A DNA stretch of 64,000 nucleotides from contig NW_025767172.1 in NCBI RefSeq assembly GCF_003918875.1, forward strand, positions 124,001 to 188,000. Direction: 5' to 3'. Positions 446 through 39,929 of this stretch are shown piece after piece (the first letter of the stretch is position 1; each line of letters starts with the position of its first letter). The notes under the pieces were generated by a model. That model did no database searches and was not told the origin of the DNA. It saw nothing but the letters and a program-made list of their open reading frames with translations. The DNA is from Haliotis rubra. Its lineage: Eukaryota. The position numbers were made by a program, and so were the translations under genes.

Positions 446-3400
446 CTGCAATGAGTGAGTGAGTGAGTATAGTTTTACGACGCTTTTAGGCAAGAAGTTA
501 AGGTCTCGCAGATACATGTCTGAAAGAGTATTGCAATCGGTGGTCATAAAAAACTTCATTAATGAGTGAGTGAGTATGGTTTTAAACCGCTTTTAGCAAT
601 ATTCCAGCAATATCACGACGGGAAACACCAGAAATGGGCTTCACACATGGTACCAATGTGGGGAATAGAACCCGGGTCTTCAGCGTGAGGAGCGGGAGCT
701 TTAACCACTAGGCTACCGAACCAACCCAATCAGTTGCAATAACGAAAAGAATACTACCATGCGGTAGTACGGAACCTTGTAGGCATTCCTTGCTGGTCAT
801 ATTGTCCTTGTTGCAGATATTCTCGTCTCTGTAGATCAGCAACAGTTTATAAAATGTTTTCATGAAAAGGTAAACATATTTGGCAACATTGTTGCGATAT
901 TGTTGAAGCATGTTTAAAAATACGTTATTTAAACCATACTCGTTCCTTTAGACAAATAATCCCAGTTCTTATCTCAACATTAAAAGCAGTGGGGCAAAGT
1001 CATCGTTGTTGCCACAGTAGTATGATTTACCTATCGATTTGATGGTAACATGGACGTCTGTTTTCAGAAAGGAAATGATTCAGAGAAAATACTATTTTGA
1101 AGAAGGTAGTGTTTTGAGAGGACCTCTTGCATCACAATGGAAATGGTTCTATTGCTGGAAATCCAACACTGCACCTAATGCCAGCTTACATACCTGGGTT
1201 AGTACAGCAAGTTACATTTCACTGGACTGAATGTCTACATTGAACAAGATGGAAGCCATGCTACGTGCAATAAATGACATAAGCTCATAGCAACAGTCTG
1301 TTATGAAGCGCGAAAAACATGGCATCTTATTACTACAGTAACCAATTGCATCTAAGTGACCTACCTATCTTGTCTCTGCACAGATTTCCTCTGTATCCCG
1401 GATGACACTCACACCGATACCCGTATGAGGTCACTAGACACGTGGAATTGTTGCTGCATATGTTATCTTTACACAAATCAGGAGGCACGTCACATTTGTC
1501 ACCAGAGTAACCTCCCCTGCATACGCATCTGAACGCACTTCCGGTAGGGATACAGACGTTGTCTCCGCATGGTTGACTGATGCAGACATCGGGTTCTGCC
1601 AATGAATAGAGAGTTTAAAGGTGTCATTTATAACATATGTTACAAGAGGCTAATGTTTTCCTCATTTGGTACATGGAGCGTTATCTGGTGACCATCAATT
1701 TCGTATTGACGCGAAATGGCATGTGCGTCAGACAGCCGTGCTTCAGGCAAAGGAACACTCACAGTTCCAACAGGAGAGCCAGGGGGCAAAGGAGTTATCG
1801 CCTAATAAAAAGGGATTTTTTTTACAATATAACTGCATGAGAGTACATGAGCCCCAGACCTCACAGCCAATCTAGGGCCAAGAAAGACTTCTGGAGATTG
1901 GTTGATTGGTTGGTGGGTCTGTTGCTTAACGCCACACTACTGCGTTACACTCACAACGAACCAAATCGCTGTGTATACATACCGGTCAACATACGAAAGT
2001 TGGTTGATTGCTTGCTGTTTTACTCCGTACTCAGCAATATTCCAGCCAAATGGCGGTGGTCTATACATAATCGAGTCTGGACCAGGCAATCCAGTGGTCA
2101 ACATCATCAACATGGATCTAGGCATGTGTCAACTCTTACGGCAAGGATAGGTTGTTGAAGACCAATTCTAACCCGGATCTTCACGTGTCGACTTCTAGAG
2201 ATTTTGTCATCTGATCTAGTTTCGCAAATAGTTTCTAGGTCACAAATATCTCAGCTTGTGACCACCAGTATCTCAGAAACTGTGACTGGAAGTGTCGACT
2301 GTTCTCATCCAATTACAAATTACAGTTTATAGTGTTATCAAATGCCTATGACTTGGGCTGAAGGAGACTTGGGTTGAAGGTCATGGTTCTGCATATTTAT
2401 TCTTGACTAATATTTTTGAATTTACAAATATTTTATTGTCTTTCTTGCAGCATTTATATCAGAAAAGCGATTACATGAATTCTTATCACAAGTTTAAAAG
2501 GAAGTAACATAATACATTCCTCATCTGAAGTTTTAAGGTAGTCAGCATCAGAAACCTCCATTGAACAAGAATCAAAACAAGGAATGTTCAACACTAGTTC
2601 TATGAAGTAAGGAACCTTGTTGATACTGTAGTAAAACAGGTTATTTGAGACCGATATCGCTTCCCGCAGCTATGATTATTATTTTGTGTTTATATTATTG
2701 TGGTCCTTGTTTTTTTGTATCGTGTGTTGTTGTTTTAGGTTTGACAGTGTAGAATACAATGCCGCGGACCTACGGCAACCCATCCACACTCAGCCCAGAC
2801 AGCGAATATCACGTCTTCCAGCACAGCGTCAACGAATGGGACTTCCAGGAAACGATGCATAGTTGAACCTTCCAAATCCCACGAAAACCTTTTCGAAGAA
2901 CAGGAAGACTGTAGAGTTTCAGAAGGGTTTCGTGTTGCTGGTGCCAAACCCGGGTACTCTGTCAATGTAAGTATCAATGTATATTCTGAGGTACCAAACC
3001 TAAGGCACCAAGCAGAACCTTATTGTTATAACCTTGTTCCAAAGTCTACACCGGGGTCGTGATGAAATAATTCCTCATTGCATGAAACCTATTGCCGGCA
3101 TGTGGTAATATTTCGCCCAAGGCATTCTGGAAATATTAGCAAGATTGGAGTTGCGAGATTTTTCATACTTGTACCTACTCATGCAAGTGCTGGGTACAAC
3201 TTCCAACACCTTGTCTAAAGCAGCCATGTCCTTCTGCACCAGGGAGAAGAGAGAGTCTTGGCTGTACGAACTACACGTTGTAGACATGTTCCTCACGACC
3301 TCCGAATTGGCTGACGGCAGGAAGTTAAGGTCTCGTAGATACATGTCTGAAAGAGCATTGCAATCGGAAGCCATAAGACACTTCATTAGTGAGTGAGTGA

Positions 3401-6400
3401 GCTTAGTTTTACGCCGTACTCAGCAATATTCCAGCTATATGGCAGCAGTCTGTAAATAATCGAGTCTGGACCAGACAATCCAGTGAGCAACAGCATGAGC
3501 ATCGATCTGGGATTGGGATACGACGACATGTGTCAACCAAGTCAGCGAGTCTGACCACCTGATCCTGTTAGTCGCCTCTTACCACAAGCATGGGTTACTG
3601 AAGATCAATTCTAACCCGGACCTTCACGAGTGTCACTTCATTAATGAGCGGGTGAGTAAGCATTGCATTTAACAATAAACCTGCAATATCATGGCGGGGA
3701 CACCAGAAATGGGCTTCACATATTGTACCCATGTGGGAAATCGAACCTGGCTCTTCAGCGTGACGAGAGGACGCTTTAACGATTAGGCTACCCCACCGCC
3801 ATATGACACTTCACTAATCAAATGAGATCTCTCAGATTTGTCAGCAACAACCATTTTAAACAATCCCAATGATGGCAATCACAGTATTCTGTAGCCCGGA
3901 CTCGATTATTTACAGACCGCCGTCATATAGCTGGAACATTGCGCAATGAGGCGTTGAACAACAAACACACAAAAACAAAACAACTCACAAGCATGTCCTC
4001 TTATTGTAATCTCCATCACAGATGGTGTCGAGGAGGGACAGTCTTGGGCTTCTTGAAATACCTCTTCTGCAATGGCTGTCCCTCCGACGTACATCGTGAG
4101 CGTTGGGTGAGACCATGTAACTGCCACATGAAGCCACTTGTTTTCCACAGCGTTCTCAACATGCAATTCATCCCTAAGACAAAAGGAAAAAACGTATTCC
4201 TTTTGAAATAAGTCTTGTCACTTGATGTGTAATATTTCCTGTTTTCATTGGGTACAAAAAAAATTCTTCAAGAAAGCAAACCTTCTCTTGGTTTCCTTTT
4301 TCAAAAAGAAAAGTCCAGGGTGTAAGAGAAGATTTTAACATTTACCACTATAAACGCATCTTAAAGATGTTTCTTTACGTGAGTTATATACTCGTAGTAT
4401 CTAAACAAATGAGAAAAACGACATCACATTATACAGGTTAGCCACACAGCCAAGTGGATCTCAGCTAATTCCTGATCGGTTACTTGAGACGAGTTTTACA
4501 CATGATATTTATTTGTACCAAGATTACTAAACAATAACCAGAAGGATAATTTATCAGTTTGAGTTTTGTGGCGCTTTTGTAGTACAGTCAGTTGGTCGCG
4601 TGGTGCAATGCACTCTATGTACTCCCGAACCTTGCATTAAGGAGATGGTTTACCTGAGCGGAGCACATTGATTCAATATGACAACATTGTAAGGTATCAT
4701 CACATAAGATGATTATAAGCTTATTTTTGAAGGTATTGTCATTTAGGTTTAAAAGTGAACGTCTTCACAAACAATATTTGTTCGAAAGAAATATCCACTG
4801 TTACCTCTCTCTTAGGATCACTCGAATGTCGGAAGAAACATAAATATCTAAGGCCGTCCCAATAGTAGGGCTGTACACCTGGAACTTGATTCCACCGTAA
4901 TCTGTGTCTACGAGCTTGATCCAGACAGAAAACGTGAAGTCGCAAATTCGAGAAGGTTTCATGCCTTCCAAGGGGACTGTAATTGGTCCTCGCAACAAGA
5001 AGTCGAATGCTGGAACCGACACACAAAACATGATATTGTGCGATTCAGTAAAACGGCCATAATACAGCAACGTTTGCCTGTGAATGAAATAATCGATTAC
5101 GTTCCGTTTAGCCATCCAACGTTATACTGGTTGGTCAATCACATTTCACATTGAAACTGGTTGACTGTATTTCAGCTAAGTATTGTGGCACTCCTCGATG
5201 CCGAAGTTGAAATTATTAAACACCAGCACTTAACTGTGGGGGAGGTCGGGTAGCCTAGTGGTTAAAGTGTTTGGTCGTCTCGTCGTCACCCGGGTTCGAT
5301 TCCCCACATGTGTACAATGTGTAAAGCCCATTTCTGGTGTCCCCGCCGTGATGTTGCTGGAATGTTGCTGATAGCGGCGTGAAACTATACTCACACAATC
5401 ACTCACTCACTCACTCACTTAGCGGAGTTCCTCTAACACGATTAGACGTGTATGGAAGACAGAAATACATGCATTCTTACCAACACATTGTTTAGCTGAG
5501 TTTGCACCTTCCTCCTCTGTGGTTGTACCAACCGGACATGGAATACACTCCATCTTGTTACCTTCATGTTGGTAAGACTTTAATGGGCATTTGAAACATG
5601 GAACCACGCCGTTGTTGGAATATGTTCCGGGATCACACATTTCTGAAACAATCAACCTCACTTTTATTTAAATATATGTATCTTAGTCACAAACATCTGA
5701 GCACTTCGTAGACACTCCTTGTTGGGACCAAGCGAGACGTGTCTTGTTTAGGTGGCTGATGAGCTAATTAAAAGTATTATATTTGGGTTTTTTTAAATAC
5801 GATGATTATAAGCTTTCATTTAGCACCTGTATGTAAATGGAATATGAACTGGGTTTCTTTGGTGAAACAATTGAGAGCATAAAGAAGTATGTTCAAAGAA
5901 TAACAATCAAATATTGGGATCCACGTATATAGAATGTAACGGTCTTCCGCCTATCCGTGGTGTAGTGGTTACTGCATCCGCCCGGAGAGCAGAAGGTAGC
6001 GGGTTCGATCCCCGACCGCGTCACACCAAAAGACGTTAAAATATGATACTTGTTGGTCCCTGCCTGGCGCTCGGCATTAATGGGTACAACAAGGACTGGT
6101 CGGCTCGGAGTCAGTATAATGTGTCTGAGTGGGGTATTCATGCTTCACTGCGGCAAGGTATCTCAGTGGGCTAGCACTATAAAACCAGCTTCAGTCTGGG
6201 TTAGTACAAGCAGCCGCACATGCACATACACACGCATGCACGTCGTCATATGAGCGAAATATTCTCTCTAAACCCAATTTCACCTCACCTCACCTTCATC
6301 ATCACATCCATTCTCTTCCCACAGAGGTTACTTAAGTCATATCTTCTCACGTACCTCTGTTCTAATACGGCCATATTTCCCGGTGAATGCATCACATCAG

Positions 6401-9400
6401 GACTTGATATTTTGGTCACTTAACATGAAACTGTTTGATTATGTAGAGGGTGAGGGTGATGTTGAGGAACTAGGACCTAGATATTACCCTGATGTTTGAT
6501 GAAGGATACATACCTTCACAGGACGAAACGTTTACATTAGCAAGTGTGACCGTGGTGTTGCCATCAGGACATTTCGAACAGCTGGTCTGTCCCTCCTGGC
6601 TCTGATACTGCCCGTACCCACACGCCATGCATTCATCCCTCGTGGAATTGTGATAGGACCCGGATGGACATGGCGCTACAAAGTACATGAGGTATGTTTT
6701 AAAGGCACGTACGGCTGTGAGGATCCAGATTAGAATAGGTTGGACCACTCAAAGTCTTGGTAGGTTGGTTTGTTGTTTAACGCCGCACACAGCAATTTTT
6801 ACAGCTATTCTTGTGCGGATAAGTAAACTTTGGTTAAAATCTACAATAATTTGGTTCATTTTTTTTGTTTCTTGTACGCTGCACCCAGCAATATTCCAGC
6901 TATATGGTCTGTAATTAATCGAGTTTGGACCAGATAATCCAGGGATCAACAGCATGAGCAACGACCTACACAACTGGGATGCGATGACGTGTCAACCAAG
7001 TCAGAGAGTCTGACCACCCGATCCCCTTAATCGCCAGTTACGACAAGTATGATTTACTGAAGACTAATTCTAATTCAAAATCTTGACATAACATACGGCT
7101 GAATCGATGGTCCCTTTTCAAAACTCCATCACTATCGCAAGCTAATGCTGAAGTATGGGGGTTAGGGTCACCTCAGCGCCAGTATTGCTTTGCGGAACGG
7201 GTGACTTGGCAGAATAGTTTTATGGTATTACCCAATGTCTATGGTGTTCGATATGGTAGAAACGTGTTAAAGATTTCGCCACAGGTCCGATTCATCATAT
7301 GGTACAATGAGTGATGTGAGTGAGTGAGTGAGTTTTAGTTTAAACGCCGCTTTTAGCAATATTCCAGCAATACCACGGCGGGGGACACCAGAAATAGTCT
7401 TCACACATTGTGCCCATGTGGGGAATCGAACCCTGGTCTTCGGTGTGACGAGCGAACACTTTAACCACAAAACTACCGCACCGCCCCCTTGTGATATACC
7501 TGTAATATTGCTTAATGGCTTTAAAACAAACTCACTGATAAATCAGATTACTCTGCATTTCTTTATTGAAAACACTTTTACTTAAAACACCCGTGTGATA
7601 ATATTTCATTCACTGTATCCCAACGCTATCATTAAATATCAGATAATAAGTGTTTATCCAAATCGCCCCATTGGAATAATTATGTGATTAGAATAAGCAT
7701 GAGAAACATATCACGTTACTATCGATCGAGCTTGATCGAACATTTTGATCAGGCAACAATGGTTCAAACAGGTTACTGTCGGTACTTTGTTGTAATGAGA
7801 CCTGAAAATATCAGAACATAAATCAGGACTGCATACCACACGAATCTTTATGGAAGTATCCGACCTTGTATCCAGGTCCACAGATAGGTATTGCGTCTCT
7901 CACTCGTGCTCTCGTTGCCCGGATCAGTCTGCCACCAGCTCGGAAGGCTGTTTTAGCTATTCGTCTAGCAATGGTTTTAAGTTTAAACGTCGAGGATCTC
8001 ATGTTTGCAGCAAAGTCACGGTTATGGACGTTGGCATTTAGTACTACTACATCAAACATGATGTAGCTAGGTCGCTTTCTGTTCCTACTAGGTCGCTTTC
8101 TGTACCTTCCTCTATACTTTCTTCGACCATACCGGGCTTCACGCTTGCGAAGCCTCAGCCATTCTACGTCATCAATTTGGTCTCCACATTTGACCTTAAC
8201 GTTCTCTACTGTACAGTGGTCTATGTTAGGACAGAGGCCATCGCTGAATACTACTTTCAGGAAGTTATCCTTTATTTCAGCATGAGCATCTTCACATGGA
8301 CCCTGGAAATAATAGTACTCTGGCATACTCAATTTTTCGCCATGCTCACGCCCTGCCAACAGAAGAAAAGACCTGAATAAATGGAAAAGTGATACATAAG
8401 GACACACACTGATACAGGAGTTGCAAGAGCCATCGGCTGTAGCCGTCAGATACAGTCTGAGGACCCGTCTGCAGAACCAAACTGTAATTGCACTCCACGG
8501 GCCACGGATTACGAGGATTACAAAACAGTGGTATAATTTGTATATATACCAGATATATGAGATTGCGGATGAAGTAGACACAGTTGCAGAAATACAGAAA
8601 ACTTAATGGGAGAGCTTAAATTGTTTTAAATACAACTGCAAAAAATTACTAAGATTTTTATGTATGCTAACTTCTTAGAATGAACGGATATAGAGTACAT
8701 TGGATGATGGGTAAAATATGCTGACAAGTATCTGATTCTGCTTTGCCAACAATATAAGCCACACCTTAATACTCTGCTCAGGACGTATGAATATAGTTTT
8801 GCACATCACCAAACAAAACTAGATAAGTATATATAAGGTTGATCTCGTTAGCATTAACTTCAGTGTTTTACAGAGTTACATAGCATTACAAGATGGAACT
8901 TTTAAACAATAACAGAGGTGGTCAAAAACTGTGATGGATTGCTATGATGGATATATGTATACTAAAAATGTTTCAAGAAAGTTCTACATTCATTTGAAAT
9001 GTTCCCAAACAAGAGGGTTTGGTTGTTTCATTAACCACGGATGTTTCTATTGAACTGTGATAAGTAAAAGTGAACATAACCACATTAGTGATGAAAACAA
9101 AGTGCAAGCAGCAAAACTCAAAACTACCATGAAGGATCATGATACAGCTACCAGAGGTAAACTATCCCAGATCATTGCTGACAATGTAGTTAATGTGCCC
9201 TTAGCTTTAGCATCTCTGCCTTGTGAAGATGCCAAAGATGGGATGAGTGTCTTGCAGTCTCAGTGCCCTGATGAACTGCAAGACTTGGTAGCTTACTTCA
9301 CTTCCACATATGTATCTGGAAGCTTTCGAACCATTCAAATTCCAGGTACCATAGGAGAGGAACATCTATCATTGTGATTACGAAGGGTAGCACATGTTTC

Positions 9401-29600: not shown

Positions 29601-31195
29601 GAATTATTGAACATAATTGTTACTGATACCAAGTTAATCGGCTTAACTCTGTCACGAACGTATACATGTACTTACTGTTGGTGCTGTCCCATCTTCTTAT
29701 GTAAGTGTTACTGATGAAACACTGCTGGCAGTTTGACATTGGCAGTTGATTATCAACAAGTATCAAGTATCTGTGGAGTCCATGTGGTTCCACTTACACT
29801 GTATAACAACACTAATGGGAAGTTTACTTTATCAAAGATCCGGGTTAGAATTTGTCTTCAGTAACACATCCTTGTCAAAAGAGGCGACTATCCGGATCGG
29901 GTGGTCAGTCTCGCTGACCTGGTTAACACATGTCATTCTATTTCAATTGTGTAGATCGATGCTAATGTTGTTGATCACTGGATTGTCTGACTCGATTATT
30001 TATAGACCGCAGCCATATAACTGGAATAATGCTGAGTGCGGCGTAAAACCACTTGGGTACCCAACCTCCCGCCGAAAAGAGGAGGGAGGAATCGTGGCAT
30101 CTGGGTCACAACATCCAGTCTACCAACAGATTGACACCGAAGACGCTGGTTCGATTCCTCACATAGTAGCACATATGTGTGAAGCCTATTCCTGGTGGAA
30201 TGTTGCTAAAAGCGGCGTAAAAATAAACACACTCGCTCCAACAGACTGGGACACTTTCACTTTTGCGGAGACTGGAATGCGTTTCGTTCGCTCTTGAAGC
30301 GTAAAAGGAACCTTTGAAATAATCGAATTCTTCTGGTGATAACTTCGATTTACTCATTATTTCTCTTGTCCACACTAGCCATCCTCGATAACAGTGTATT
30401 ATATCTCCACCTTAATTGACCCGTGAAGATCCGAGTTAGAATTGATCTTCAGTAACCCATGCTTGTCGTAAGAGGCGACTAACGGGATCGGGTGGTCAGG
30501 CTCGCTGACTTGATTGACAAATGCCATCGTATCTCAAATTGTGTAGATAGATGATCATGCTGTTGATCATTGGATTGTCTGGTCCAGACTCGATTATTGC
30601 TTGTGCGGCGTAAAACCAAACTCATTCGCTCCATCTTAATATGTGACAAAATTCGATACAAATCGGTGTGCGCCCAATTTGAACGACATGGTGCTAAAAA
30701 CAGCAGTGCAAAACTTTAAATTATGATGGTGTGATGAGAGAAATGAAGATGGCGACGTGCCTCCAAAACAAAGCTGTGATGGCGAATACTTCCAGGGTAT
30801 TGTCACTTAAGAATGAATTTGTGATAAACACTACCCATCGTCTATTATTCCATAATCTGTGATTTCAATTATTCAGTTGTTCAGTAGGAATAAATATAGA
30901 AATGAAATAATTGCGATTTTCGTTATCCCTTTCAATATTTCAAATCTGTTAAATGCACATAGTCTTATCTTGGGGTTATGCTACTAATTGTACACTTGTT
31001 AAGATGCTGTATTTCCTTTTCAGAGTAGCGTCCCTTTTGCCTGCAAGAAACCAATAATCGTGTTTTATTCCAAGATTCCTCCATGGTTTTTCAGCCAACG
31101 TCTTCGTGGGTTTCACAAAAGCAAGTAAAAGGTGAATGTAAAAGACAAGGTTTAATGCCTGTTGTTTTTTAATTACATTTTCTGAAAATTGTCCT

Positions 31196-31349
31196 TTAAG
31201 TGTTGATACACTTGCAGCATCCGGGTACCTGTACCCATTCTATGTTGTACTTCCGATTGTCATGGGTACCACGTTGAGGGTCTTCAGTGACAGCGGTTGC
31301 CGACTCATACCTTTGTATGCACTTTCCATACTGGAAGTTCGTCACATGT
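31196..31349 (-). CDS. Last exon of cystine-knot gene
   Basis: ttgcag acceptor; HVTNFQYGKCIQRYESATAVTED...VPGCCKCINT*. Confidence 0.88.
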
Positions 31350-34300
31350 CTGCAACGAGAGAAACAGGACTGATCATCACGATGAATGGTTTGCCAAGTA
31401 TGACAAGGATGAGTGTAGACTAAGCTTAATACCTCTGTAAAAAGTATTTCTTTCACAGTTGGACTAACAAGTCACAAATATACTATCCCAAAAAAGAAAC
31501 GCATATGCCACTGCGAAAACATCAGTTTAGAAGAAGGAAATGTCTGTACAACCAAGTGGATAATTTTTGATAACGTGAGCGTGATGGTGACGACGTAGCA
31601 CGGTCCCGACGTCCAGTCTCCTGGCTCTCAGTCCAATCTCGCTCAACCTGTTCCGTACCGTTTGACCGGATATCCTCCGAAGTCAAGGCACCCGGGCGGC
31701 TGTGCACTCACCCCTGGCAGTACCATCACGCAAATGTAGTACCCAGATGTACCGATCTTGGGCTACAGTGGTGACTCGAGGTCTGCCTGTAAGGCGACGG
31801 TAATTTGTTATACCTGTTTGGTTGTAACGAGCTGCAAGCCGTGATATTGTGCTCAGACTAACATTCAGACGCCTGGTAATCTCCAGCGTGCATTCTTTCA
31901 ATGGCGATGGTTCGTGTCGCAGCATCAAGACGTGGCGTAGTGATTTGACCTGGAAACTCCTTCAAAACGAATGCCGATTTCCGTAAGTAATCTGGATTTT
32001 TATAGCCAGACAGTGCATGCTTTTTTGTTGCACAATTTCAACTGGAAGGTGATTTTTTTGCGTTGTGGCGGTGCGTTTTTAATCCTTGTAAGAAATCTCA
32101 CCAAAATGAACATTTTCAGGTACAGACGATTTTTTACTTGTGCAATTGTGTAAAATCACGTTATCAACACTTTTGTTACATATTTTGACGATTGTTTGCA
32201 AACTAAAGGTAATTTATATATGTTTTAAATGCAAGTATATTATGTACATGTATATTATGTACATGCCCAGCTAACACACAGCATTTTCAACACAGGGGCC
32301 TGTAACGCTAAAAACTGCCATCAAGGTAGATAGTAATACTGTCACTGACGGGGCCTCAGTATTATATAAAGGGAAAGGGATGTAACGAGGTCAACGCACC
32401 AAGTTCGTTTCAGGGCGAATTCAACAATGCTCACTGTATTTATCCCATTTAAAGTATGCACACATTTCAAGCCAATAGATTTACCTACAAAATGAGACAT
32501 ACAGCACAAAAATCGAAGCTCCCAAAGTATTGCTTCGATTCTTGTGCTGTATGTCATGGCCTTCTCACTTCCAAGACTTGAACTCGAACGAACACATGTC
32601 GGATGAGCTGGGAAGACAGCAGATGAATAAACCCCTGACCTTGCAAGAACTTGGGCTAGCCCTCCGATCACAATATACTGTACGTACAGGTTCTCCACGA
32701 GGAGACGTTCTGTTGTCGCTATGTCCGCTCTGAGCAGTTGCACCCGTTATTGACTGCGCCTGTGCCAACAGTTTTGTCAATTTGATGTTCGCAATTCCAA
32801 CTATTGCCCTGTCACTGTAAATTTACTGATAGGTTCGAATTGTTATACTCACTGACATTGCTCAAACTTGAAAAACTGCTTGACGGTATGAAATTGGGCT
32901 ATCTTCTTCTTCTCGCCGTACACGTTGAGAAGGTGACTTTTAGACTTAAAATACGTTATCCTGCAAACAAAAATGAAAATGGGCAATGAGCTCAATATGA
33001 AGTATTCATTTGTAAATGAAATATTTGACAGTTTGCCTGTCATATGTTTTCAAAATAACATCGTGTGTTCTCGGTATCAAAGTATAATTAATAAATCAAG
33101 TGAGTTAGGCCTTCCCAGCTGAAAGTGCATATACTGCATGTTTCGTGATAAGAAATACATAAAAACCCAAGATCAGTGGTGTCGTGCTAAGCAGTACGAC
33201 ATTGCGGCATTACCAAAAACATTCACCAAATAATACCACATATTATCGACCAAGATCAACTGTATTGGATACAATATCGGTCAAATTGCCGGATATTAAT
33301 ATTTCAATTTCTTTCATATTTATACGAGTGAGTATTGTTTTCCTCTGCTTTAAGCATTATTCCAGCAATGTCACGGCTGGGGACACCAGAAATGGGCTTC
33401 ACACATTGTACCCATGAGGGGAATCGAACCCGGGTTTTCGGCGTGATGAGCGGACGCTTTAACTACTAGGCTACCCCCACCCCTTATATTTTTATGAAGA
33501 AATCATGAAATCTCAGTGTTGCAGCTCAGTAGGATCAAGGGCTCTTGATACTTGACGTCTTATGATGCCTAAGAGGCATGAAGGCAACTGCTTTGTGGCA
33601 TGTAAAGGAATAGGATTGTTGTGTAGAAGCGGTATGCTTGTCGCAAAGAGTCCGATCACATGATCAAAAGGTGCACATGGCTGATAGTGTAGCACCAAGC
33701 CTTGTGTCAGAAAACACTTTCAATCGGTTTGTCTGGTCTGGTCTTCTTTGAGTGGCACTGTAGAAGCTTGGAAGTAAAACACAGACACACTTTATGGATA
33801 ACAGCTTCTTTATTTCGTGAGAGCGACACTTTCGATACAGATTATTGTACCGTTGTCCGTGCTTGACAGCGGTACAAGAATCTGTCAGCTTCTTTGGGGC
33901 ATGTAAAGGAATAGGATTACAGTGTAGAGGTGGTATGCGGGTCGAAAGAGTCACTTCTTTGAGTGTCATTGTAGAAGTTGGGAAGTACGGAGAACGGTAC
34001 AAGAATCTGTATCGAAACGTCGCTCTCACGAAATAGAATAGATGTTATCTATAAAGTTTGTCTATGTTGGTATAGGCTCGATTGCAGGCAGATCACCATG
34101 ATATAGCTACATTAATGGTTTCAACATCATTCACTCGCTACCTGGGGCGGTGGGGTAGCCTTGTGGTTAAAGCGCCCGTTCGTCAGGCTTAAGACCCGGG
34201 TTCGATTTCCCACATGGGTACAATCTGTGAAGCCAATATCTGGTGTCACCCGTCGTGATATTGCTGAAATATTGCTAAAAGCGACGTAAAATCAAACTCA

Positions 34301-37300
34301 CTCACTCAACCACTAGCTACCTCCAATCATGAGCATGGTGACGTACGTTTGACAACAGGCGTGGAATGTAACGAGGCCCGGGGCCATCCTCCGGTCCCTG
34401 TGGTACTTCGGTGTGTGCGTCGCGTGGCATGAGACTTGGCAAGAAGCCTCGTCCTCCACGCTGGAGTTCACTTCATGGTACTGGGAGGAGATGTTGAAAA
34501 ATGTCTGTTCGAAGTCAAATTGCTGCTCCACCGTCCTGAAGAACCCAGGGAACCGCTCACTGACCTGGTCTTCGAGGTTCCCAGTGTGCCTGAAGGGAAG
34601 AGCATCCATTTCATATCATTATTGCTATTAATATTAATGTTTATGGACAGGTTACTTCTAAAGAATTTGAAGTTGTATTACAACTTGATGTTCCTTGTTG
34701 AAATAGAGATTGTGCAAACCGTTACTTTGCAGGAAACATTGATGTTCATTGACATTCTTGTTCATAGCCACTTCACGTGAAAGAAAAAAACATCTTATTC
34801 ATAGCCACATCACGTGAAAGAAAAAAACATCTTATTCACAGCCACGTCACGTGAATTGGTGATGGCATAGTCAGTGCACTCAAAGGAGTAATTACAACAT
34901 TTAATCTGCCACGCCTAAATGGTCCTTACTGCAGTATTTCTACAGGTCTCTCCTACAGGTCTCTTCAATGCCTCTCTCATACAAGGACTGTCGTTTACAT
35001 ACCCTTTTGTACATAAACAGACTGACAAATGTACATACACAAATGTTCGTACACTTCGTCCATAGAAGAATTGACAAATATACTTTTCATATGAGGTTTG
35101 ACGTATGTACCAAGGCTTCTCTCCATATAAGCACTGCCACGTGTACTAACATTTGTTTCCATATCAGTATGGTCATATGTGCTTACACTTCCCTCCATAT
35201 AAGGAGTGTCACATGTGCTTACACTTCCTTCCATATAAGGAGTGTCACATGTGCTTACACTTCCTTCCATATAAGGAGCGTCACGTGTGCTTACACTTCC
35301 CTCCATATAAAGGAGAGTGTGCTTACACTTCCTTCCATATAAGGAGTGTCACTTCCATATAAGGAGTGTGCTTACACTTCCCTCCATATAGGAGAGTCAC
35401 GCGTGCTTACACTTCCCTCCATATAAGGAGCGTCACGTTTGCTTACACTTCCTTCCATATAAGGAGCGTCACATGTGTGCTTACACTTCCCTCCATGTAA
35501 GTACTGTCACATGTGCTTACACGTTCCTCCATATAAGGAGCGTCACTGTGCTTACATGTGCTTACCTTCCATATAAGGAGCGTCACATAAGGAGAGTGTG
35601 CTTACACTTCCTCCATATAAGGAGCGTCACATCCATGTGCTTACACTTCCCTCCATGCTAACAAAGTGAGTGTCACAGGAGAGTGCTTGTTCCTCCATAT
35701 AAGGAGCGTCACGTGTGCTTACACTTCCCTCCATATAAGGAGTGTCACATGTGTGCTTACACTTCCCTCCATATAAGGAGTGTCATAATGTGCTTACACT
35801 TCCCTCCATGTAAGTACTGTCACGTGTGCTTACACTTCCTTCCATATAAGGAGCGTCTTCCCAGCGTCACGTGTGCTTACACTTCCCTCCATATAAGGAG
35901 TGTCACATGTGCTTACACTTCCCTCCATGCTTACAAGGAGTGCCACATGTGCCTACACTTCCCTCCATATAAGGAGCGTCACATGTGCTTACACTTCCCC
36001 TCCATGTAAGTACTGTCACGTGTGCTTACACTTCCTTCCATATAAGGAGTGTCACATTTGCTTACACTTACCTCCATATAAGGAGTGTCACATGTGCTTA
36101 CACTTCCCTCCATGTAAGTACTGTCACGTTTGCTTACACTTTCCTCCATATAAGGAGCGTCACATGTGTGCTTACACTTCCCTCCATAAAATGAGGGTCG
36201 AATATGTTTACACTTCCTTCCATATAAGGAGAGTCACGTGTGCTTACACTTCCCTCCATATAAGGAGCGTCACATGTGTGCTTCCACTTCCTCCATATAA
36301 GGAGTGTCACATGTGCTTACACTTTCCTCCATATAAGGAGCGTCACATGTGTGCTTACACTTCCCTCCATAAAATGAGGGTCGAATATGTTTACACTTCC
36401 TTCCATATAAGGAGAGTCACGTGTGCTTACACTTCCCTCCATATAAAGAGCGTCACATGTGCTTACACTTTTTTCCATCTGAGGAACATATATATTCATG
36501 TTTGTATTTTAACATGTGCTTTCACTGCTTTTGTTATGAGGATTGGCATATGTAACACAATGGAGTGACACATGTGCTTACACTTCTCTCCATGTATGGA
36601 TCGACACATGTACCACAGTGACTGACACACGTATTTATACTTGCCTCCATATGCATTGACACATGTCAACAGATTGACAGATGTACTTACACTTTCCTCC
36701 ATATAAGGATCGATATATGATACATTTTCCACAACAGATTGACAGATGTACTTCTACACTTCCTCTCCATATAAGGATTGATACATTTTACCACAACAGT
36801 CATGCAATTTCTACATGTGTTACATGTACTCTCCATATAAGGATTGATACATTTACCACAACAGATTGACAGATGTACTTCTACATGTACTCTCCATATA
36901 AGGATTGATACATTTACCACAACAGATTGACAGATGTACTTCTACATGTACTCTCCATATAAGGATTGATACATTTACCACACAGATTGACTGATGCTTA
37001 CACTGTACTCTCCATAGGATTGATACATTTACCACAACAGATTGACAGATGTACTTGTACATGTACTTCCATATTTCCTACATTTACCACAACAGATTGA
37101 CAGATGTGCTTACACTTTCTCCATATAGGAGGATACATGTGCTTACATTTGTACTCAACAGATCTGATAAGGATTGAGGTCGAATACATGTCCATATACA
37201 CTTCCTTCCATATACAGAGAGACACGATGTACATTTTACACTTCATGTACCTCCATATACCACAAAGATTGAGAGCGTGATACATTTACCACAACAGATT

Positions 37301-39929
37301 GAACATGATTGATGTACTCTCCAGATGTACTTTCTACACTTTCTCCATATGATTGAACATATATACAACATGTTTGTATTTTAAGATGATGTACTTCTAC
37401 ATGTACTCTCCTATAAGGATTGATACATATGAGGATTGGCATATGTACTCTCCATATAAGGATTGATACATTTACCACAACAGATTGACAGATGTACTTC
37501 TACATGTACTCTCCATATAAGGATTGATACATTTACCACAACAGATTGACAGATGTACTTCTACATGTACTCTCCATATAAGGATTGATACATTTACCAC
37601 AACAGATTGACAGATGTACTTCTACTTCTCTCGATATAAGTATTGACACGTGTACCACAATGGATTGGCACATGTACCACAATGGATTGACACATGTACC
37701 GCAATGGATTGACACACGGATTTATACTTCCCTCCTTATAAGGAATAACACATGTACCACAATGGATTGACAAATGTATTGACACTTCTTTTCAGTGTAT
37801 GGATTGACGCGTGTACCACATTGGATTGGCTGGTGTACTTACACTTCTCTCCAAATAAGGACTGCCAAACTGGTTATGGTTATGACACAGCACAACGTCA
37901 CTATGACAATCTGTAAACACGTAGGAAAGCAACATACACTGCAAATGACATTTACTGTACAATTATTTCGGATTGCAGAACAACGAGAATCCAAGATCCA
38001 ATGGGCAAATTGTAAGCCTGAGATTAAAATGGCACATAGTACGGGATGATCACAGAGTCGAATACATGATTTTGATTTAAGCCACAGCAATATCCCAGTT
38101 ATGCTAAGATGCCTGTCTGTTAACCTGACCAGACAAACCAATGGCCGAGAGAATGAGCACCGATAACAAAAGGTATTAGATGTATTCATTTTCAATAATT
38201 ATTCACCGATTCCTACCCATACGCGTGTCGTGCAGCATGTCTGTGTGGGTGTCTTGTCAGATGCAGCTGCCCGAACACCCGGTGTTGTCACTTGGCCCGC
38301 ACTTAGCACTCTGCTTCCTTGCTTGACCATACTGCTGTGGCATTCAGTGTAGGACTGCTGGGTATCCGGAAACGATTAGGAACGTATTATTCTTCTGTGT
38401 GATCTTGCTGAACTAATACCAGACGTATTTAACAAATTCCAGTATTGATTTCTGATTCACAAGGCAAAACAGGTAGGTTGATGCTGTTTCCATGCAAATT
38501 GGTTTTAATTTGTACTGACAAATCTGAAGTCAGATTTATCGAAGATTATTCTAAACTATATTCAAAAACTCGCTCTATCGAAGATTAATCTAAACTCAAT
38601 ATCGAAAAAAACTTCGCTCTTTAAGCAGTGCAGGATACATACTGTCGTTAAAACTCTTCGTGAGACAATTTGTGATCTGAACACGGTTTTTAGAACAAAG
38701 GGGTGTAGGTATATCCCTGTACTTCTATTTTTGTTATCATACAAATACCATTTCAAAATATCTTTTCACTTTAAGAATGATATTGTCATTTTAATGTTCA
38801 GGTCCAAAATCTGAATCATGCTTTTCTGTGTTACCTTCATCGGGGCTCCAGATAAGGGCCGTATCGGCGTATGTACGGATAAAAAATATGCACGATACAG
38901 TAGGAAATAATTTAGAAAATGTAGCAGATACGCACCACAGCAATGGTTTACGGTCTTAGAATCATTTACAGACGTATTTATCTGAAAAAAATGTTGTTTT
39001 ATTGTTAATTGACCTGTTTACACAAGAGTAGCAATGTTGTGGTGCATATATGAAACGAAACAAGATTACTGATAGTCCATTAACTTCCATTCAGTACTCT
39101 AAATGTACACTTAAGGTTTTCCAGTACTCAGTATTGAACAAATAAGGAGTACGTACTCCTGATGTTGAAAAATTATCTGGAGCCCTGCTTCATTTTATGT
39201 TGTAAAACGATAATAACCTCAGCTTGTATTTATGACGGGTGCCACGGGTGGGGCAGGATATGCTCACACCTGTTCGCGAACATCTGTTATCATCACAACT
39301 TGTTGGTGTTTCATAGACTCATGCTCATTATGTAATAGGAAATGTACAATCGACTTTCCTTTTAGCTCAAATTTCTTAAGGATATGGACTGGGTTTTGCC
39401 GATTCCATATAGCGTGGAAACGGTAAGATTAACAATGTGTGAGTGAATTTGGTTTTACGCCGCACTCAATATTCCAGCTATATGGAAACATATATACACA
39501 AAGAACTTAGTCAAGCACCCCCTGACATAATATCACGATTGAATGAGCCCCGATCTTAACCATTTGGAGAATATTTGTACAGACCCTGGCCCAACTGGAA
39601 GCTGCTTTACACGAGGAATAGCAGGATCAGGAGCCTGACAGAGGGTATAAGGAGGAGGGTGCTGGCTGTCATACAGTCACATGGAGGTTACACTCGGTAT
39701 TGTCCTTGAATCGTGTCAGACACGCAAAATGACATTTTAAATGTTTTCATTCGGCAACATTAAACATTCAACATTAAACATAGAGGATAATTCAGCCAGT
39801 ATGTGACTTTGGAATATACAAACGATTTCCTATTCAGCTGTTAAAAGTTACAAAAACGTAAGTGGTCATTTAAGTAGATGATCCGTTCCCTTACCTTAAT
39901 ACAAGGGTTCCTTCAGAGACTGCCAGCAT
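31196..39929 (-). CDS. Spaetzle/neurotrophin-like cystine-knot precursor (multi-exon)
   Basis: Exons 39929-39895, (39634-39611 micro-exon, uncertain), 34589-34347, 32960-32853, 31349-31196, all joined in phase 2. The mature region after RDRR, ...HACCQTITYFKSKSHLLNVYGEKKKIAQFHTVKQFFKFEQCQHVTNFQYGKCIQRY...WVQVPGCCKCINT, parallels the Spaetzle motifs KQxxxxExC, CxQxY and PxCCKC. Confidence 0.8.
31510..32250 (-). mobile_element. Tc1/mariner remnant
   Basis: RRLNVSLSTISRL...TGRPRVTTVAQDRYI. Confidence 0.8.
32545..32735 (+). mobile_element. Tc1 transposase C-terminal remnant
   Basis: WPSHFQDLNSNEHMSDELGR, a degenerate WPxxSPDLNPIEHxW. Confidence 0.7.
32853..32960 (-). CDS. Middle exon of cystine-knot gene
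   Basis: tttgcag acceptor, gtgagt donor; 108 nt, phase 2-2. Confidence 0.88.
34347..34589 (-). CDS. Pro-domain exon of cystine-knot gene
   Basis: HTGNLEDQVSERF...KYHRDRRMAPGLVTFHACCQT; 243 nt, phase 2-2. Confidence 0.85.
35170..36480. repeat. Minisatellite, 36-bp unit
   Basis: acatgtgcttacacttccctccatataaggagtgtc. Confidence 0.95.
36690..37780. repeat. Minisatellite, ~61-bp unit grading into ~20-bp units
   Basis: atttaccacaacagattgacagatgtacttctacatgtactctccatataaggattgatac. Confidence 0.9.
38841..39187. mobile_element. MITE with (c)agggctccagataa TIRs
   Basis: cggggctccagataa ... ttatctggagccctg, flanked by cttcat on both sides. Confidence 0.8.

What the first reader, a model, noticed from the sequence alone, without database searches (positions are those of the whole stretch)
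31196..39929. Spaetzle-like cystine-knot cytokine precursor hidden across small exons
No single ORF reveals it. Spliced, it gives a signal-peptide-like start, a pro-domain, an RDRR furin-type site and a ~100-aa mature domain that aligns by eye with Drosophila Spaetzle C106 (KQFFKFEQC, CIQRY, VPGCCKC). Spaetzle is the Toll ligand in arthropods and is activated by clip-domain proteases. A furin-processed homolog in a probable mollusc is a candidate endogenous Toll-like receptor or neurotrophin-type ligand (inference).
Basis: partly seen in the sequence, partly recalled or inferred. Interest (0 to 1): 0.7.

Follow-up and report, generated by a model that had tools for sequence, protein, structure and literature searches.

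The report
Abalone membrane-anchored Spaetzle-like cytokine gene
This is a real, expressed five-exon abalone (Haliotis rubra) gene for a membrane-anchored precursor whose last 100 residues form a Spaetzle/nerve-growth-factor-type cystine-knot signalling domain released at a furin-type site. It is a candidate natural ligand for mollusc Toll receptors, but RefSeq already holds the gene as an uncharacterized protein and its receptor is untested.

Summary
The core observation holds. On the minus strand, three exons (34589-34347, 32960-32853, 31349-31196) encode a pro-region, an RDRR site and a 100-residue, 7-cysteine domain. RNA contigs from three runs join these exons at exactly those borders.

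Coding starts at 38330, not 39929. There are two 5' coding exons (38330-38217, 37910-37843). They encode a 36-residue N-terminal tail and a 22-residue hydrophobic span, which looks like a type II signal anchor rather than a classical signal peptide.

The five exons translate exactly to RefSeq XP_046584026.1, "uncharacterized protein LOC124291147" of Haliotis rubra.

- **Family:** relatives with the same layout (anchor, PGFFRT pro-helix, RxxR, knot) occur in abalones, a limpet, an apple snail, oysters, clams and a scallop.
- **Sequence:** Pfam Spaetzle is the only relevant hit. It is below cut-off here (20 bits against 27) and above it in the scallop member (30 bits). A family profile hits only Spaetzle chains in the PDB.
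- **Fold:** the AlphaFold model (pLDDT 86) matches NGF (Z 9.5), mosquito Spaetzle (Z 6.9) and coagulogen.

Receptor, dimer state and immune role are untested.

Verdict: a new member of a known kind, of moderate interest.

The parts
38217..38330 (-). Coding exon 1. ATG at 38330-38328, residues 1-38: a cytoplasmic-type N-terminal tail plus the first two residues of the hydrophobic span. Donor TGG|gtagga, phase 0. The extent of the 5' UTR upstream is unknown.
   Evidence: tblastn of P0001 on the window. The exon set translates exactly to P0001. The tail is predicted disordered.
37843..37910 (-). Coding exon 2, residues 39-61 (last codon split). It carries the hydrophobic span IVIVTLCCVITITSLAVLIW followed by the conserved W-R-E. 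This is the inferred signal anchor / transmembrane helix. Acceptor ttacag|, donor AGT|gtaagt.
   Evidence: an uncharged span of 20-23 residues in all 13 family members; a long helix over residues 32-73. T49, W58, R59 and E60 are invariant in the four-sequence alignment A1, and T49 is still invariant in the 13-sequence alignment A5.
34347..34589 (-). Coding exon 3, residues 61-142. It holds the pro-region with the conserved PGFFRT helix, the C111/C115 pair, the RDRR site and the start of the mature domain (HACCQ).
   Evidence: RNA contigs X1 record 7, X2 record 14 and X3 record 22 end exactly at 34589 and at about 34346-34361, and carry 238-254 more nucleotides of 5' mRNA. Borders.
34388..34399 (-). 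Codons for R125-D-R-R128, the furin-type (R-x-K/R-R) processing site. Predicted cleavage is before M129 (34387-34385).
   Evidence: Sequence. R125 and R128 are at least 90% conserved across 13 family members. The motif is listed per protein. It lies in a low-confidence, probably disordered stretch, residues 100-130. Cleavage itself is inferred.
32853..32960 (-). Coding exon 4, residues 142-178 of the mature domain, with the KQFFKFEQC motif (C177).
   Evidence: X2 record 8 covers 32960-32853. X1 record 1 and X2 record 8 then continue without a gap into 31349. Borders.
31196..31349 (-). Coding exon 5, residues 178-228 (C188, then GCCKC at the end) and the TAA stop at 31198-31196. The 3' UTR reaches at least 31167. 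An ATTAAA lies at 31173-31168.
   Evidence: RNA contigs cover 31167-31349 with no mismatches. Alone, this exon hits Pfam Spaetzle at E 0.0079 over profile positions 56-95 of 96.
39895..39929 (-). It is not part of the coding sequence. It could be a non-coding leader exon or a chance match.
   Evidence: Sequence. It is absent from P0001 and its orthologues. It encodes no hydrophobic core.

Best explanation
The region holds LOC124291147 of Haliotis rubra, a five-exon, minus-strand, transcribed gene for a 228-residue precursor.

Shown:
- The exon structure and the splicing of the three 3' exons.
- Exact identity to a RefSeq protein.
- Membership of a family found in gastropods and bivalves.
- A confident predicted NGF/Spaetzle-type cystine-knot fold for residues 129-228.

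Inferred mechanism:
- The N-terminal tail and the 22-residue hydrophobic span insert the protein as a type II (N-in) membrane protein.
- The pro-region (a helix carrying PGFFRT, then a disordered linker with two cysteines) presents RDRR128 to a furin-type convertase in the secretory pathway.
- Cleavage releases a ~100-residue, 7-cysteine knot domain. Three disulfides would form the knot. The seventh cysteine could make an interchain bond, as in Spaetzle.
- The released domain acts as an extracellular dimeric ligand.

The most likely receptor class is a Toll-type receptor, because the only sequence-level kinship is to Spaetzle. In its processing it resembles the furin-cleaved Drosophila Spaetzle paralogues DNT1/DNT2 and vertebrate neurotrophins. 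It does not resemble Spaetzle-1, which is cleaved by a protease cascade.
For: - **Gene model:** searches give the borders and phases. Searches show the pro exon finds one 228-residue protein, XP_046584026.1/XP_046584027.1, which maps to five exons.
- **Transcription and splicing:** runs X1-X3 have exon-only coverage and contigs that bridge 32853|31349. The DNA control X5 covers the introns.
- **Family:** searches find Haliotis cracherodii, H. asinina, Patella, Pomacea (named 'Spaetzle domain-containing' by UniRef), Magallana, Crassostrea, Mercenaria, Ruditapes and Mizuhopecten. The alignments show invariant C139, C140, C177, C188, C222, C223, C225 and near-invariant R125/R128.
- **Spaetzle kinship:** PF16077 covers profile positions 3-94 of 96 at 20.1 bits for the mature domain. 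It hits 7 of 9 and then 7 of 10 family members, and the scallop member reaches 30.0 bits against a cut-off of 27. The family profile finds only Spaetzle chains in the PDB: 7B1B, 7B1C, 4BV4 and 3E07, at E 0.01-0.07.
- **Fold:** pLDDT 85.6 and pTM 0.70. Foldseek gives TM 0.65-0.71 to neurotrophins. VIA gives Z 9.5 for NGF, 6.9 for Aedes Spz1C (24% identity) and 6.5-6.7 for coagulogen.
- **Anchor:**
- **Furin precedent:** DNT1/2 are cleaved by furins while Spz is not (PMC5412559).
- **Not the canonical neurotrophin:** a separate NGF-family exon exists elsewhere in the genome, PF00243 at 30 bits.
Against: - This protein itself is below Pfam's curated Spaetzle cut-off (14.8 bits whole, 20.1 bits for the domain, against 27).
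- The PDB profile E-values are marginal (0.01-0.07).
- Structurally the model is nearer to NGF (Z 9.5) than to Spaetzle (Z 6.9 for one Aedes chain, 3.1-3.6 for others). AlphaFold may lean towards the well-sampled NGF.
- The signal-anchor reading rests on hydropathy and a predicted helix only. No dedicated signal-peptide or topology predictor was available, and a cleavable signal peptide with a long n-region is not excluded.
- Furin cleavage, dimerisation and Toll binding are all untested. The homodimer co-fold gave no verdict.
- Published work reports that mollusc TLRs bind microbial patterns directly (statement in PMC7773633).
Confidence: 0.55

Rival explanations
1. It is a neurotrophin-type ligand. 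The released knot domain signals through Trk-like or p75-like receptors in the nervous system rather than through Toll receptors.
For: The best structural matches are NGF, NT-3, NT-4 and BDNF (TM 0.65-0.71, Z 8.3-9.5). Furin-type pro-protein processing is the neurotrophin mode (PMC5412559).
Against: There is no Pfam NGF hit even at E 10, and the family profile finds no neurotrophin in the PDB. The genome has a separate exon that passes the NGF family cut-off (C2571:227714-227839, 30 bits), which is a better candidate for the true neurotrophin. The cysteine pattern (CC...C...C...CCxC, 7 Cys) is Spaetzle-like.
Confidence: 0.2
2. It is a cystine-knot ligand for another or an unknown receptor (for example a Torso-type kinase, as for PTTH/Trunk). 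Alternatively it acts while still tethered to the membrane as a juxtacrine signal and is not a soluble cytokine.
For: A conserved membrane anchor and a conserved pro-helix in all 13 members suggest the tethered form matters. PTTH, IL-17 and coagulogen also appear among the fold matches (Z 4.6-6.7). Patella and Pomacea members lack an RxxR motif.
Against: The PTTH and IL-17 matches are clearly weaker than NGF/Spaetzle, and no Pfam hit to those families was found. RxxR is near-invariant elsewhere in the family.
Confidence: 0.15
3. Translation starts at 39929, a short signal-peptide-like exon is spliced straight to 34589, and the product is a classical secreted precursor.
For: The donor at 39895 (AG|gtaagg) fits the phase of the 34589 acceptor. 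RNA contigs show at least 254 nt of mRNA upstream of 34589, whose origin I could not map.
Against: The 11 residues MLAVSEGTLVL have no hydrophobic core. The exon 1-2 peptide of the RefSeq model is conserved in two other abalones, and the anchor is conserved throughout the family. The five-exon set reproduces the database protein exactly.
Confidence: 0.03

Closest known systems
Drosophila Spaetzle (Spz-1, C106 domain; PDB 3E07, 4BV4, 4LXR) and Aedes aegypti Spaetzle1C (7B1B/7B1C)
   Same: C-terminal ~100-residue cystine-knot domain with 7 cysteines ending in CCKC. The pro-domain is removed by cleavage immediately before the knot. These are the only PDB sequence hits of the family profile. Identity in structural alignment is 24%.
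   Different: Spz-1 has a cleavable signal peptide, is secreted whole and is cut extracellularly by Easter or SPE after a single Arg (PMC5412559). The abalone protein has an N-terminal tail plus a 22-residue anchor and an RDRR furin-type site. Its score is below the Pfam cut-off. Toll binding is untested.
Drosophila neurotrophins DNT1/DNT2 (Spz2/Spz5)
   Same: Spaetzle-family knots whose pro-domains carry conserved furin sites and are cleaved inside the cell (PMC5412559). This is the same processing logic as proposed here.
   Different: No membrane anchor is described for them.
Vertebrate neurotrophins (NGF, BDNF, NT-3, NT-4)
   Same: Best structural match of the model (Z 8.3-9.5, rmsd 1.8-2.8 over 83-89 residues). 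They are furin-processed pro-proteins.
   Different: No sequence-level match to Pfam NGF. The cysteine count and spacing differ. The abalone genome has its own NGF-family exon elsewhere.
[quoted passage not shown] 2015, Fish Shellfish Immunol 47:712; cited in PMC6915886 and PMC7773633)
   Same: A mollusc gene described as a Spaetzle homologue. It is reported as induced by heat-killed bacteria, with no proof of a role in TLR signalling (PMC7773633). Venerid clams (Mercenaria, Ruditapes) have members of the present family.
   Different: I could not read that paper or its sequence. Whether PuSpz belongs to this anchored, RxxR-bearing family is not known.
Horseshoe crab coagulogen (1AOC)
   Same: Same NGF-like knot fold (Z 6.5-6.7, 19-20% identity).
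   Different: It is a clotting protein activated by two cuts, with no sequence-family hit and a different architecture.

Membership tests
Spaetzle (Pfam PF16077) | Score at or above Pfam's curated gathering cut-off (27 bits) | tested here: inconclusive
   P0001 scores 14.8 bits whole and 20.1 bits (E 0.00097) for residues 125-228, aligned over profile positions 3-94 of 96. That is below the cut-off. The scallop family member P0015 reaches 30.0 bits and is tied to P0001 by the family profile at E 2.5e-40. Membership therefore rests on transitivity.
Spaetzle (Pfam PF16077) | NGF-like cystine-knot fold of the C-terminal domain | tested here: met
   AlphaFold2 pLDDT 85.6, all-beta. Matches to NGF (Z 9.5), Aedes Spz1C (Z 6.9) and coagulogen (Z 6.5). 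This is a prediction, not a solved structure.
Spaetzle (Pfam PF16077) | Seven cysteines with a C-terminal CCxC, aligned with those of Spz C106 | tested here: met
   C139, C140, C177, C188, C222, C223 and C225. The HMM alignment pairs C140, C177, C188 and CCKC with the Spz cysteines. Other molluscs have two extra cysteines (GCTGCxC) that the abalones lack. Disulfide connectivity was not examined.
Spaetzle (Pfam PF16077) | Pro-protein activated by cleavage just N-terminal of the knot | tested here: met
   RDRR125-128 lies 10 residues before the first knot cysteine, in a low-confidence linker. RxxR is near-invariant in the family. The site type (furin) differs from the Spz-1 site cut by SPE or Easter. 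Cleavage was not shown experimentally.
Spaetzle (Pfam PF16077) | Cleavable N-terminal signal peptide (secreted precursor) | tested here: not met
   A 36-residue N-terminal flank precedes an uncharged span of 22 residues. The span is 20-23 residues in all 13 members and is predicted as a long helix. This reads as a signal anchor. The call rests on hydropathy only, without a dedicated predictor.
Spaetzle (Pfam PF16077) | Disulfide-linked homodimer | tested here: inconclusive
   The co-fold of two copies of residues 129-228 scored 0.00 and returned 'no answer'. That counts neither for nor against.
Spaetzle (Pfam PF16077) | Binds and activates a Toll receptor ectodomain | not tested
   No receptor was chosen or folded.
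Neurotrophin / NGF (Pfam PF00243) | Sequence match to the NGF family profile | tested here: not met
   No PF00243 hit for P0001 or its mature domain at E up to 10. No neurotrophin chain appears among the PDB profile hits. A different locus in the genome does pass (L022, 30 bits).
Neurotrophin / NGF (Pfam PF00243) | NGF fold | tested here: met
   Z 9.4-9.5, rmsd 2.4-2.6 over 85 residues to 1SG1 and 4ZBN. Spaetzle and coagulogen share this fold, so it does not discriminate between the families.

The most novel reading that the evidence does not exclude
Molluscs as a whole possess a clade of Spaetzle-type ligands made as type II membrane proteins and shed by furin, and these are the endogenous ligands of molluscan Toll receptors. 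Cytokine-type (indirect) Toll activation would then predate arthropods, and it would use a tethered-precursor mechanism not described for any Spaetzle or neurotrophin.
Probability: 0.3. Interest if true: 0.75.

Novelty: new member of a known kind. Interest (0 to 1): 0.45.

Why it matters
Whether Toll receptors outside arthropods are switched on by an endogenous cytokine, as in flies, or by microbes directly, as in vertebrates, is still unsettled. A 2020 paper notes only one Spaetzle homologue described outside arthropods, in a clam, with no proven link to TLR signalling (PMC7773633).

This abalone gene belongs to a conserved family across gastropods and bivalves that databases almost always label 'uncharacterized'. 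It gives a concrete ligand to test against mollusc Toll receptors. The conserved membrane anchor plus furin site suggest a release mechanism different from the fly protease cascade. Abalones are farmed animals that suffer from Vibrio and herpesvirus disease, so an immune cytokine would also have practical interest.

The gene model itself is already in RefSeq, and the function remains inference.

Tried and rejected
- **Six-frame PF16077 on the whole genome:** it gave only three weak, low-complexity hits and did not list this locus. Exon-split domains are too short for it.
- **Single exons against PDB sequences:** no hits. Only family profiles reach Spaetzle.
- **My own scan for a signal-peptide exon spliced to 34589:** it gave no convincing ATG-started signal peptide. 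It did list the true exon 2 donor (AGT|gtaagt at 37843), but inside a longer spurious ORF, and I recognised it only after the database protein was found.
- **Homodimer co-fold of the mature domain:** 'no answer' (score 0.00). Not evidence either way.
- **The look-up of encoding contigs for P0001:** nothing on record, because records of this genome are left out.
- **Literature searches for a described abalone Spaetzle:** none found in the open-access library. The 2015 clam paper is not held.
- **Joined model:** I sent no spliced model of my own to any search or fold tool. The exons were searched one by one by reference, and all full-length work used the database protein P0001. The only joining was a local equality check against P0001 in a script.
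- **Pseudogene or chance ORFs:** rejected, given the exon-only RNA contigs, intact frames and conservation.
Full report
**1. What is in the sequence**

Reading the DNA and checking frames gives three exons with canonical borders:
- 34589-34347 (acceptor ...ccttcag|G, donor AC|gtacgt)
- 32960-32853 (acceptor ...tttgcag|G, donor CA|gtgagt)
- 31349-31196 (acceptor ...gttgcag|A, stop TAA at 31198-31196)

Every junction splits a codon 2+1, so the frames fit. Together the three exons encode a pro-region, R-D-R-R, and then a 100-residue stretch with seven cysteines that ends in GCCKCINT.

**2. Is it transcribed and spliced?**

I laid X1-X3 and X5 on 30900-34900.
- X5 covers the whole stretch, introns included, at about 16-20-fold, with huge peaks on repeats. 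It serves as the DNA control.
- X1-X3 have zero depth in unique intron bins (33044-33311, 33580-33713, 34652-34900). They cover the exons.
- X1 record 1 and X2 record 8 run from 32853 straight into 31349 with contiguous record positions. X2 record 8 begins the middle exon at exactly 32960, with 6 more bases from the exon before it.
- Three contigs stop at 34589 (X1 record 7, X2 record 14) or near it (X3 record 22). Records 7 and 14 carry a further 238 and 254 nucleotides of mRNA on the 5' side.

The three 3' exons are therefore joined in transcripts at the predicted borders. These are contigs, so they say nothing about expression level, and the tissue is unknown.

**3. The 5' end**

My own scan for a signal-peptide exon found nothing convincing.

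A search of 1.8 billion representative proteins with the pro exon alone returned one protein, P0001, of 228 residues. It is XP_046584026.1/XP_046584027.1, 'uncharacterized protein LOC124291147 [Haliotis rubra]'. The genome size and contig count reported for the window's assembly (1.378 Gb in 2855 contigs) are those of one abalone assembly.

Mapping P0001 back adds two coding exons, 38330-38217 and 37910-37843, both with GT-AG borders. The five exons translate to P0001 without a single difference. That local equality check was the only joining I did.

The exon 1-2 peptide is conserved in H. cracherodii and H. asinina. RefSeq lists two protein accessions with the same sequence. This could mean alternative 5' UTRs, but I could not test it.

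**4. The N-terminus is an anchor, not a classical signal peptide**

Residues 1-36 are polar with a few basic residues. Residues 37-58 form an uncharged hydrophobic span of 22 residues, followed by the conserved W-R-E and an acidic stretch.
- In all 13 full-length family members the span is 20-23 residues long.
- The N-terminal flank varies from 8 to 93 residues.
- The N side is more positive than the C side.
- AlphaFold models residues 32-73 as one long helix.

This is the pattern of a type II signal anchor. It is inference from hydropathy, because no dedicated predictor was available.

**5. The family**

Word-seeded searches with P0001 and then with growing alignments found relatives only in molluscs: two other abalones (78-79% identity), Patella caerulea, Pomacea canaliculata, Magallana gigas, Crassostrea virginica, Mercenaria mercenaria (two), Ruditapes philippinarum and Mizuhopecten yessoensis. 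There were also several transcript-derived proteins of unknown source.

Nearly all are named 'uncharacterized'. UniRef calls the Pomacea one 'Spaetzle domain-containing protein'.

The layout is conserved:
- anchor
- Y/F-P-G-F-F-R-T helix
- C-x3-C
- RxxR, usually RRRR in bivalves, with R125 and R128 at least 90% conserved
- H-G-C-C-Q/M, K-Q-F-F, C, (G-C-T-G-C-x-)C, A-V-V, G-C-C-K-C-x-N

Abalones have lost the C-x2-C pair that other members carry, which takes them from nine cysteines to seven. Patella and the N-terminally truncated Pomacea model lack RxxR.

These searches see only proteins that share 5-residue words and have 0.55-1.75 times the query length. Absence outside molluscs is therefore not shown.

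**6. Kinship by sequence**

- The last exon alone hits Pfam Spaetzle (PF16077) at E 0.0079.
- The mature domain of P0001 scores 20.1 bits (E 0.00097) over profile positions 3-94 of 96. The whole protein scores 14.8 bits. Both are under the 27-bit cut-off.
- PF16077 is the recurring hit across the family (7 of 9, then 7 of 10 members). The scallop member passes the cut-off at 30.0 bits.
- A profile of eight mature domains puts four Spaetzle chains at the top of the PDB list. With fourteen domains, those four are the only hits at E up to 10: Aedes Spz1C 7B1B/7B1C at E 0.01, and Drosophila Spz C106 4BV4/3E07 at E 0.07.
- Those alignments span the whole domain and pair the cysteines.
- No NGF-family hit appears at any threshold.

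**7. Fold**

The mature domain, modelled with the eight-sequence alignment, gives pLDDT 85.6 and pTM 0.70, and is all-beta with long strand pairs.
- Foldseek ranks neurotrophins first (TM 0.65-0.71, probability 1.0, E about 3e-3 and above). Coagulogen and Aedes Spz1C follow.
- VIA-align gives NGF Z 9.5, Aedes Spz1C Z 6.9 (24% identity), coagulogen Z 6.5, IL-17A Z 5.9 and PTTH Z 5.3.
- An unbiased pass over 48,161 representative chains gives the same order. Only two chains reach Z 8, both NGF. Drosophila Spz 3E07 scores Z 3.6.

The fold is thus the NGF/Spaetzle/coagulogen type of cystine knot. The would-refute condition 'not a cystine knot' is not met, as far as a prediction can tell.

The full-length model (pLDDT 71) shows a disordered tail (1-31), the anchor helix, a confident pro-helix (81-98), a low-confidence linker (100-130) that holds RDRR, and then the knot.

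**8. How it most likely works**

Shown:
- a transcribed, spliced, conserved gene
- a knot domain of Spaetzle kinship and NGF-like predicted fold
- a conserved RxxR immediately before the knot
- a conserved hydrophobic span near the N-terminus

Inferred:
- type II insertion into the membrane
- cleavage at RDRR128|M129 by a furin-type convertase, which sheds the ~100-residue domain
- dimer formation, with the odd seventh cysteine as a possible interchain bond
- signalling through a Toll-type receptor

Foldi et al. (PMC5412559) show that Drosophila Spz is secreted whole and cut outside the cell by serine proteases, whereas DNT1 and DNT2 carry conserved furin sites and are cut inside the cell, as vertebrate neurotrophins are. 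The abalone protein follows the second mode.

I put about 0.9 on 'real gene for a Spaetzle/NGF-fold pro-protein' and about 0.4 on 'Toll ligand'. The combined statement gets 0.55.

**9. Rivals**

- **A neurotrophin acting on Trk/p75 (0.2).** It is favoured by the structural ranking. It is disfavoured by the lack of any NGF sequence signal and by a separate exon in the genome that passes the NGF cut-off (C2571:227714-227839, 30 bits).
- **A ligand for another receptor, or a tethered juxtacrine signal (0.15).**

**10. What is known already**

PMC7773633 states that a Spaetzle homologue had not been described outside arthropods except in the clam Paphia undulata. That gene is induced by heat-killed bacteria but has no shown role in TLR signalling. 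The paper is Yu et al. [quoted passage not shown] I could not read it, so I cannot say whether it belongs to this anchored family.

No abalone Spaetzle paper turned up. I did not test it.

**11. Paralogues**

Searching the genome with single exons found two tandem paralogues on contig C1990, near 417.5-419.2 kb and 388-392 kb.
- They have the same three-exon 3' structure.
- One has a similar anchor exon.
- They lack RxxR. The aligned positions read ...LPARQISG... and ...TARFGKQSSG....
- They end in GSCKC instead of GCCKC.

**12. Verdict**

The gene is a new, unnamed member of a known kind (Spaetzle/neurotrophin-type cystine-knot pro-proteins), with one unusual and conserved feature, a membrane anchor. 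Its function is open.

Noticed in passing
G000:C1990:417554-419214 and 387991-391983 (loci L020, L021, L005, L006, L014, L015): Two tandem paralogues about 30 kb apart share the same pro/mid/last exon structure. The last exon is 56% and 47-57% identical (the two searches disagree for the second). They lack the RxxR site (a single Arg in ...LPARQ..., or none) and end in GSCKC, so they have one cysteine fewer. One has an anchor exon (...ITTIGLACYVIWKEV) at L020 around 6190-6270. They may be processed by a different protease.
   Followed up: partly
G000:C2615:78378-78434, C2407:63127-63183 and 6543-6599, C1314:18467-18523 and 3008-3064 (L007-L010, L012): At least five near-identical exons end in ...WFAIDGCCKCLNT. 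They look like the last exon of another multi-copy cystine-knot family. Pfam gives no hit for the one tested. They may relate to the other Spaetzle-like gene noted earlier in this genome (s1-322335), but that was not checked.
   Followed up: partly
G000:C2571:227714-227839 (L022:1450-1647): An exon passes the Pfam NGF family cut-off (30 bits; ...SRCMPKKSYVMALV...WIQVESSCNCAIS). It is a candidate bona fide abalone neurotrophin gene, preceded by a long (CT)n-type simple repeat in the same frame.
   Followed up: partly
window 35122-36485 and 36718-37677: Intron 2 of the gene holds large minisatellite arrays, a 36-bp unit x 36 copies and a 61-bp unit x 15.6 copies, about 70-79% matched. They produce the long repetitive ORFs seen on both strands.
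   Followed up: no
window 31683-31928 (minus strand, intron 4): An ORF fragment shows helix-turn-helix hits typical of Tc1/mariner-type transposase N-termini (HTH_29 at 24.9 bits, below cut-off). The stretch 31436-32507 is very high-copy in the DNA run (summed depth about 20,000-70,000).
   Followed up: partly
window 33312-33445 and 34116-34308 (intron 3): An extremely abundant short repeat (summed depth up to 6 million in the DNA run) is present as two copies in opposite orientation. Many 'opposite strands' joints connect about 33379 with about 34254. It is SINE-like. The second copy ends about 40 bp from the donor of exon 3.
   Followed up: no
alignment A4, columns around residues 183-186 of P0001: The three abalone proteins have lost the two cysteines of the GCTGCxC motif that every other family member keeps (9 cysteines down to 7). 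Both were lost together, as expected if they pair with each other.
   Followed up: no
window 7823-8581 (minus strand): A 252-residue open frame with an Arg/Lys-rich stretch (…RYGRRKYRGRYRKRPSRNRKRPS…) has no Pfam hit.
   Followed up: partly
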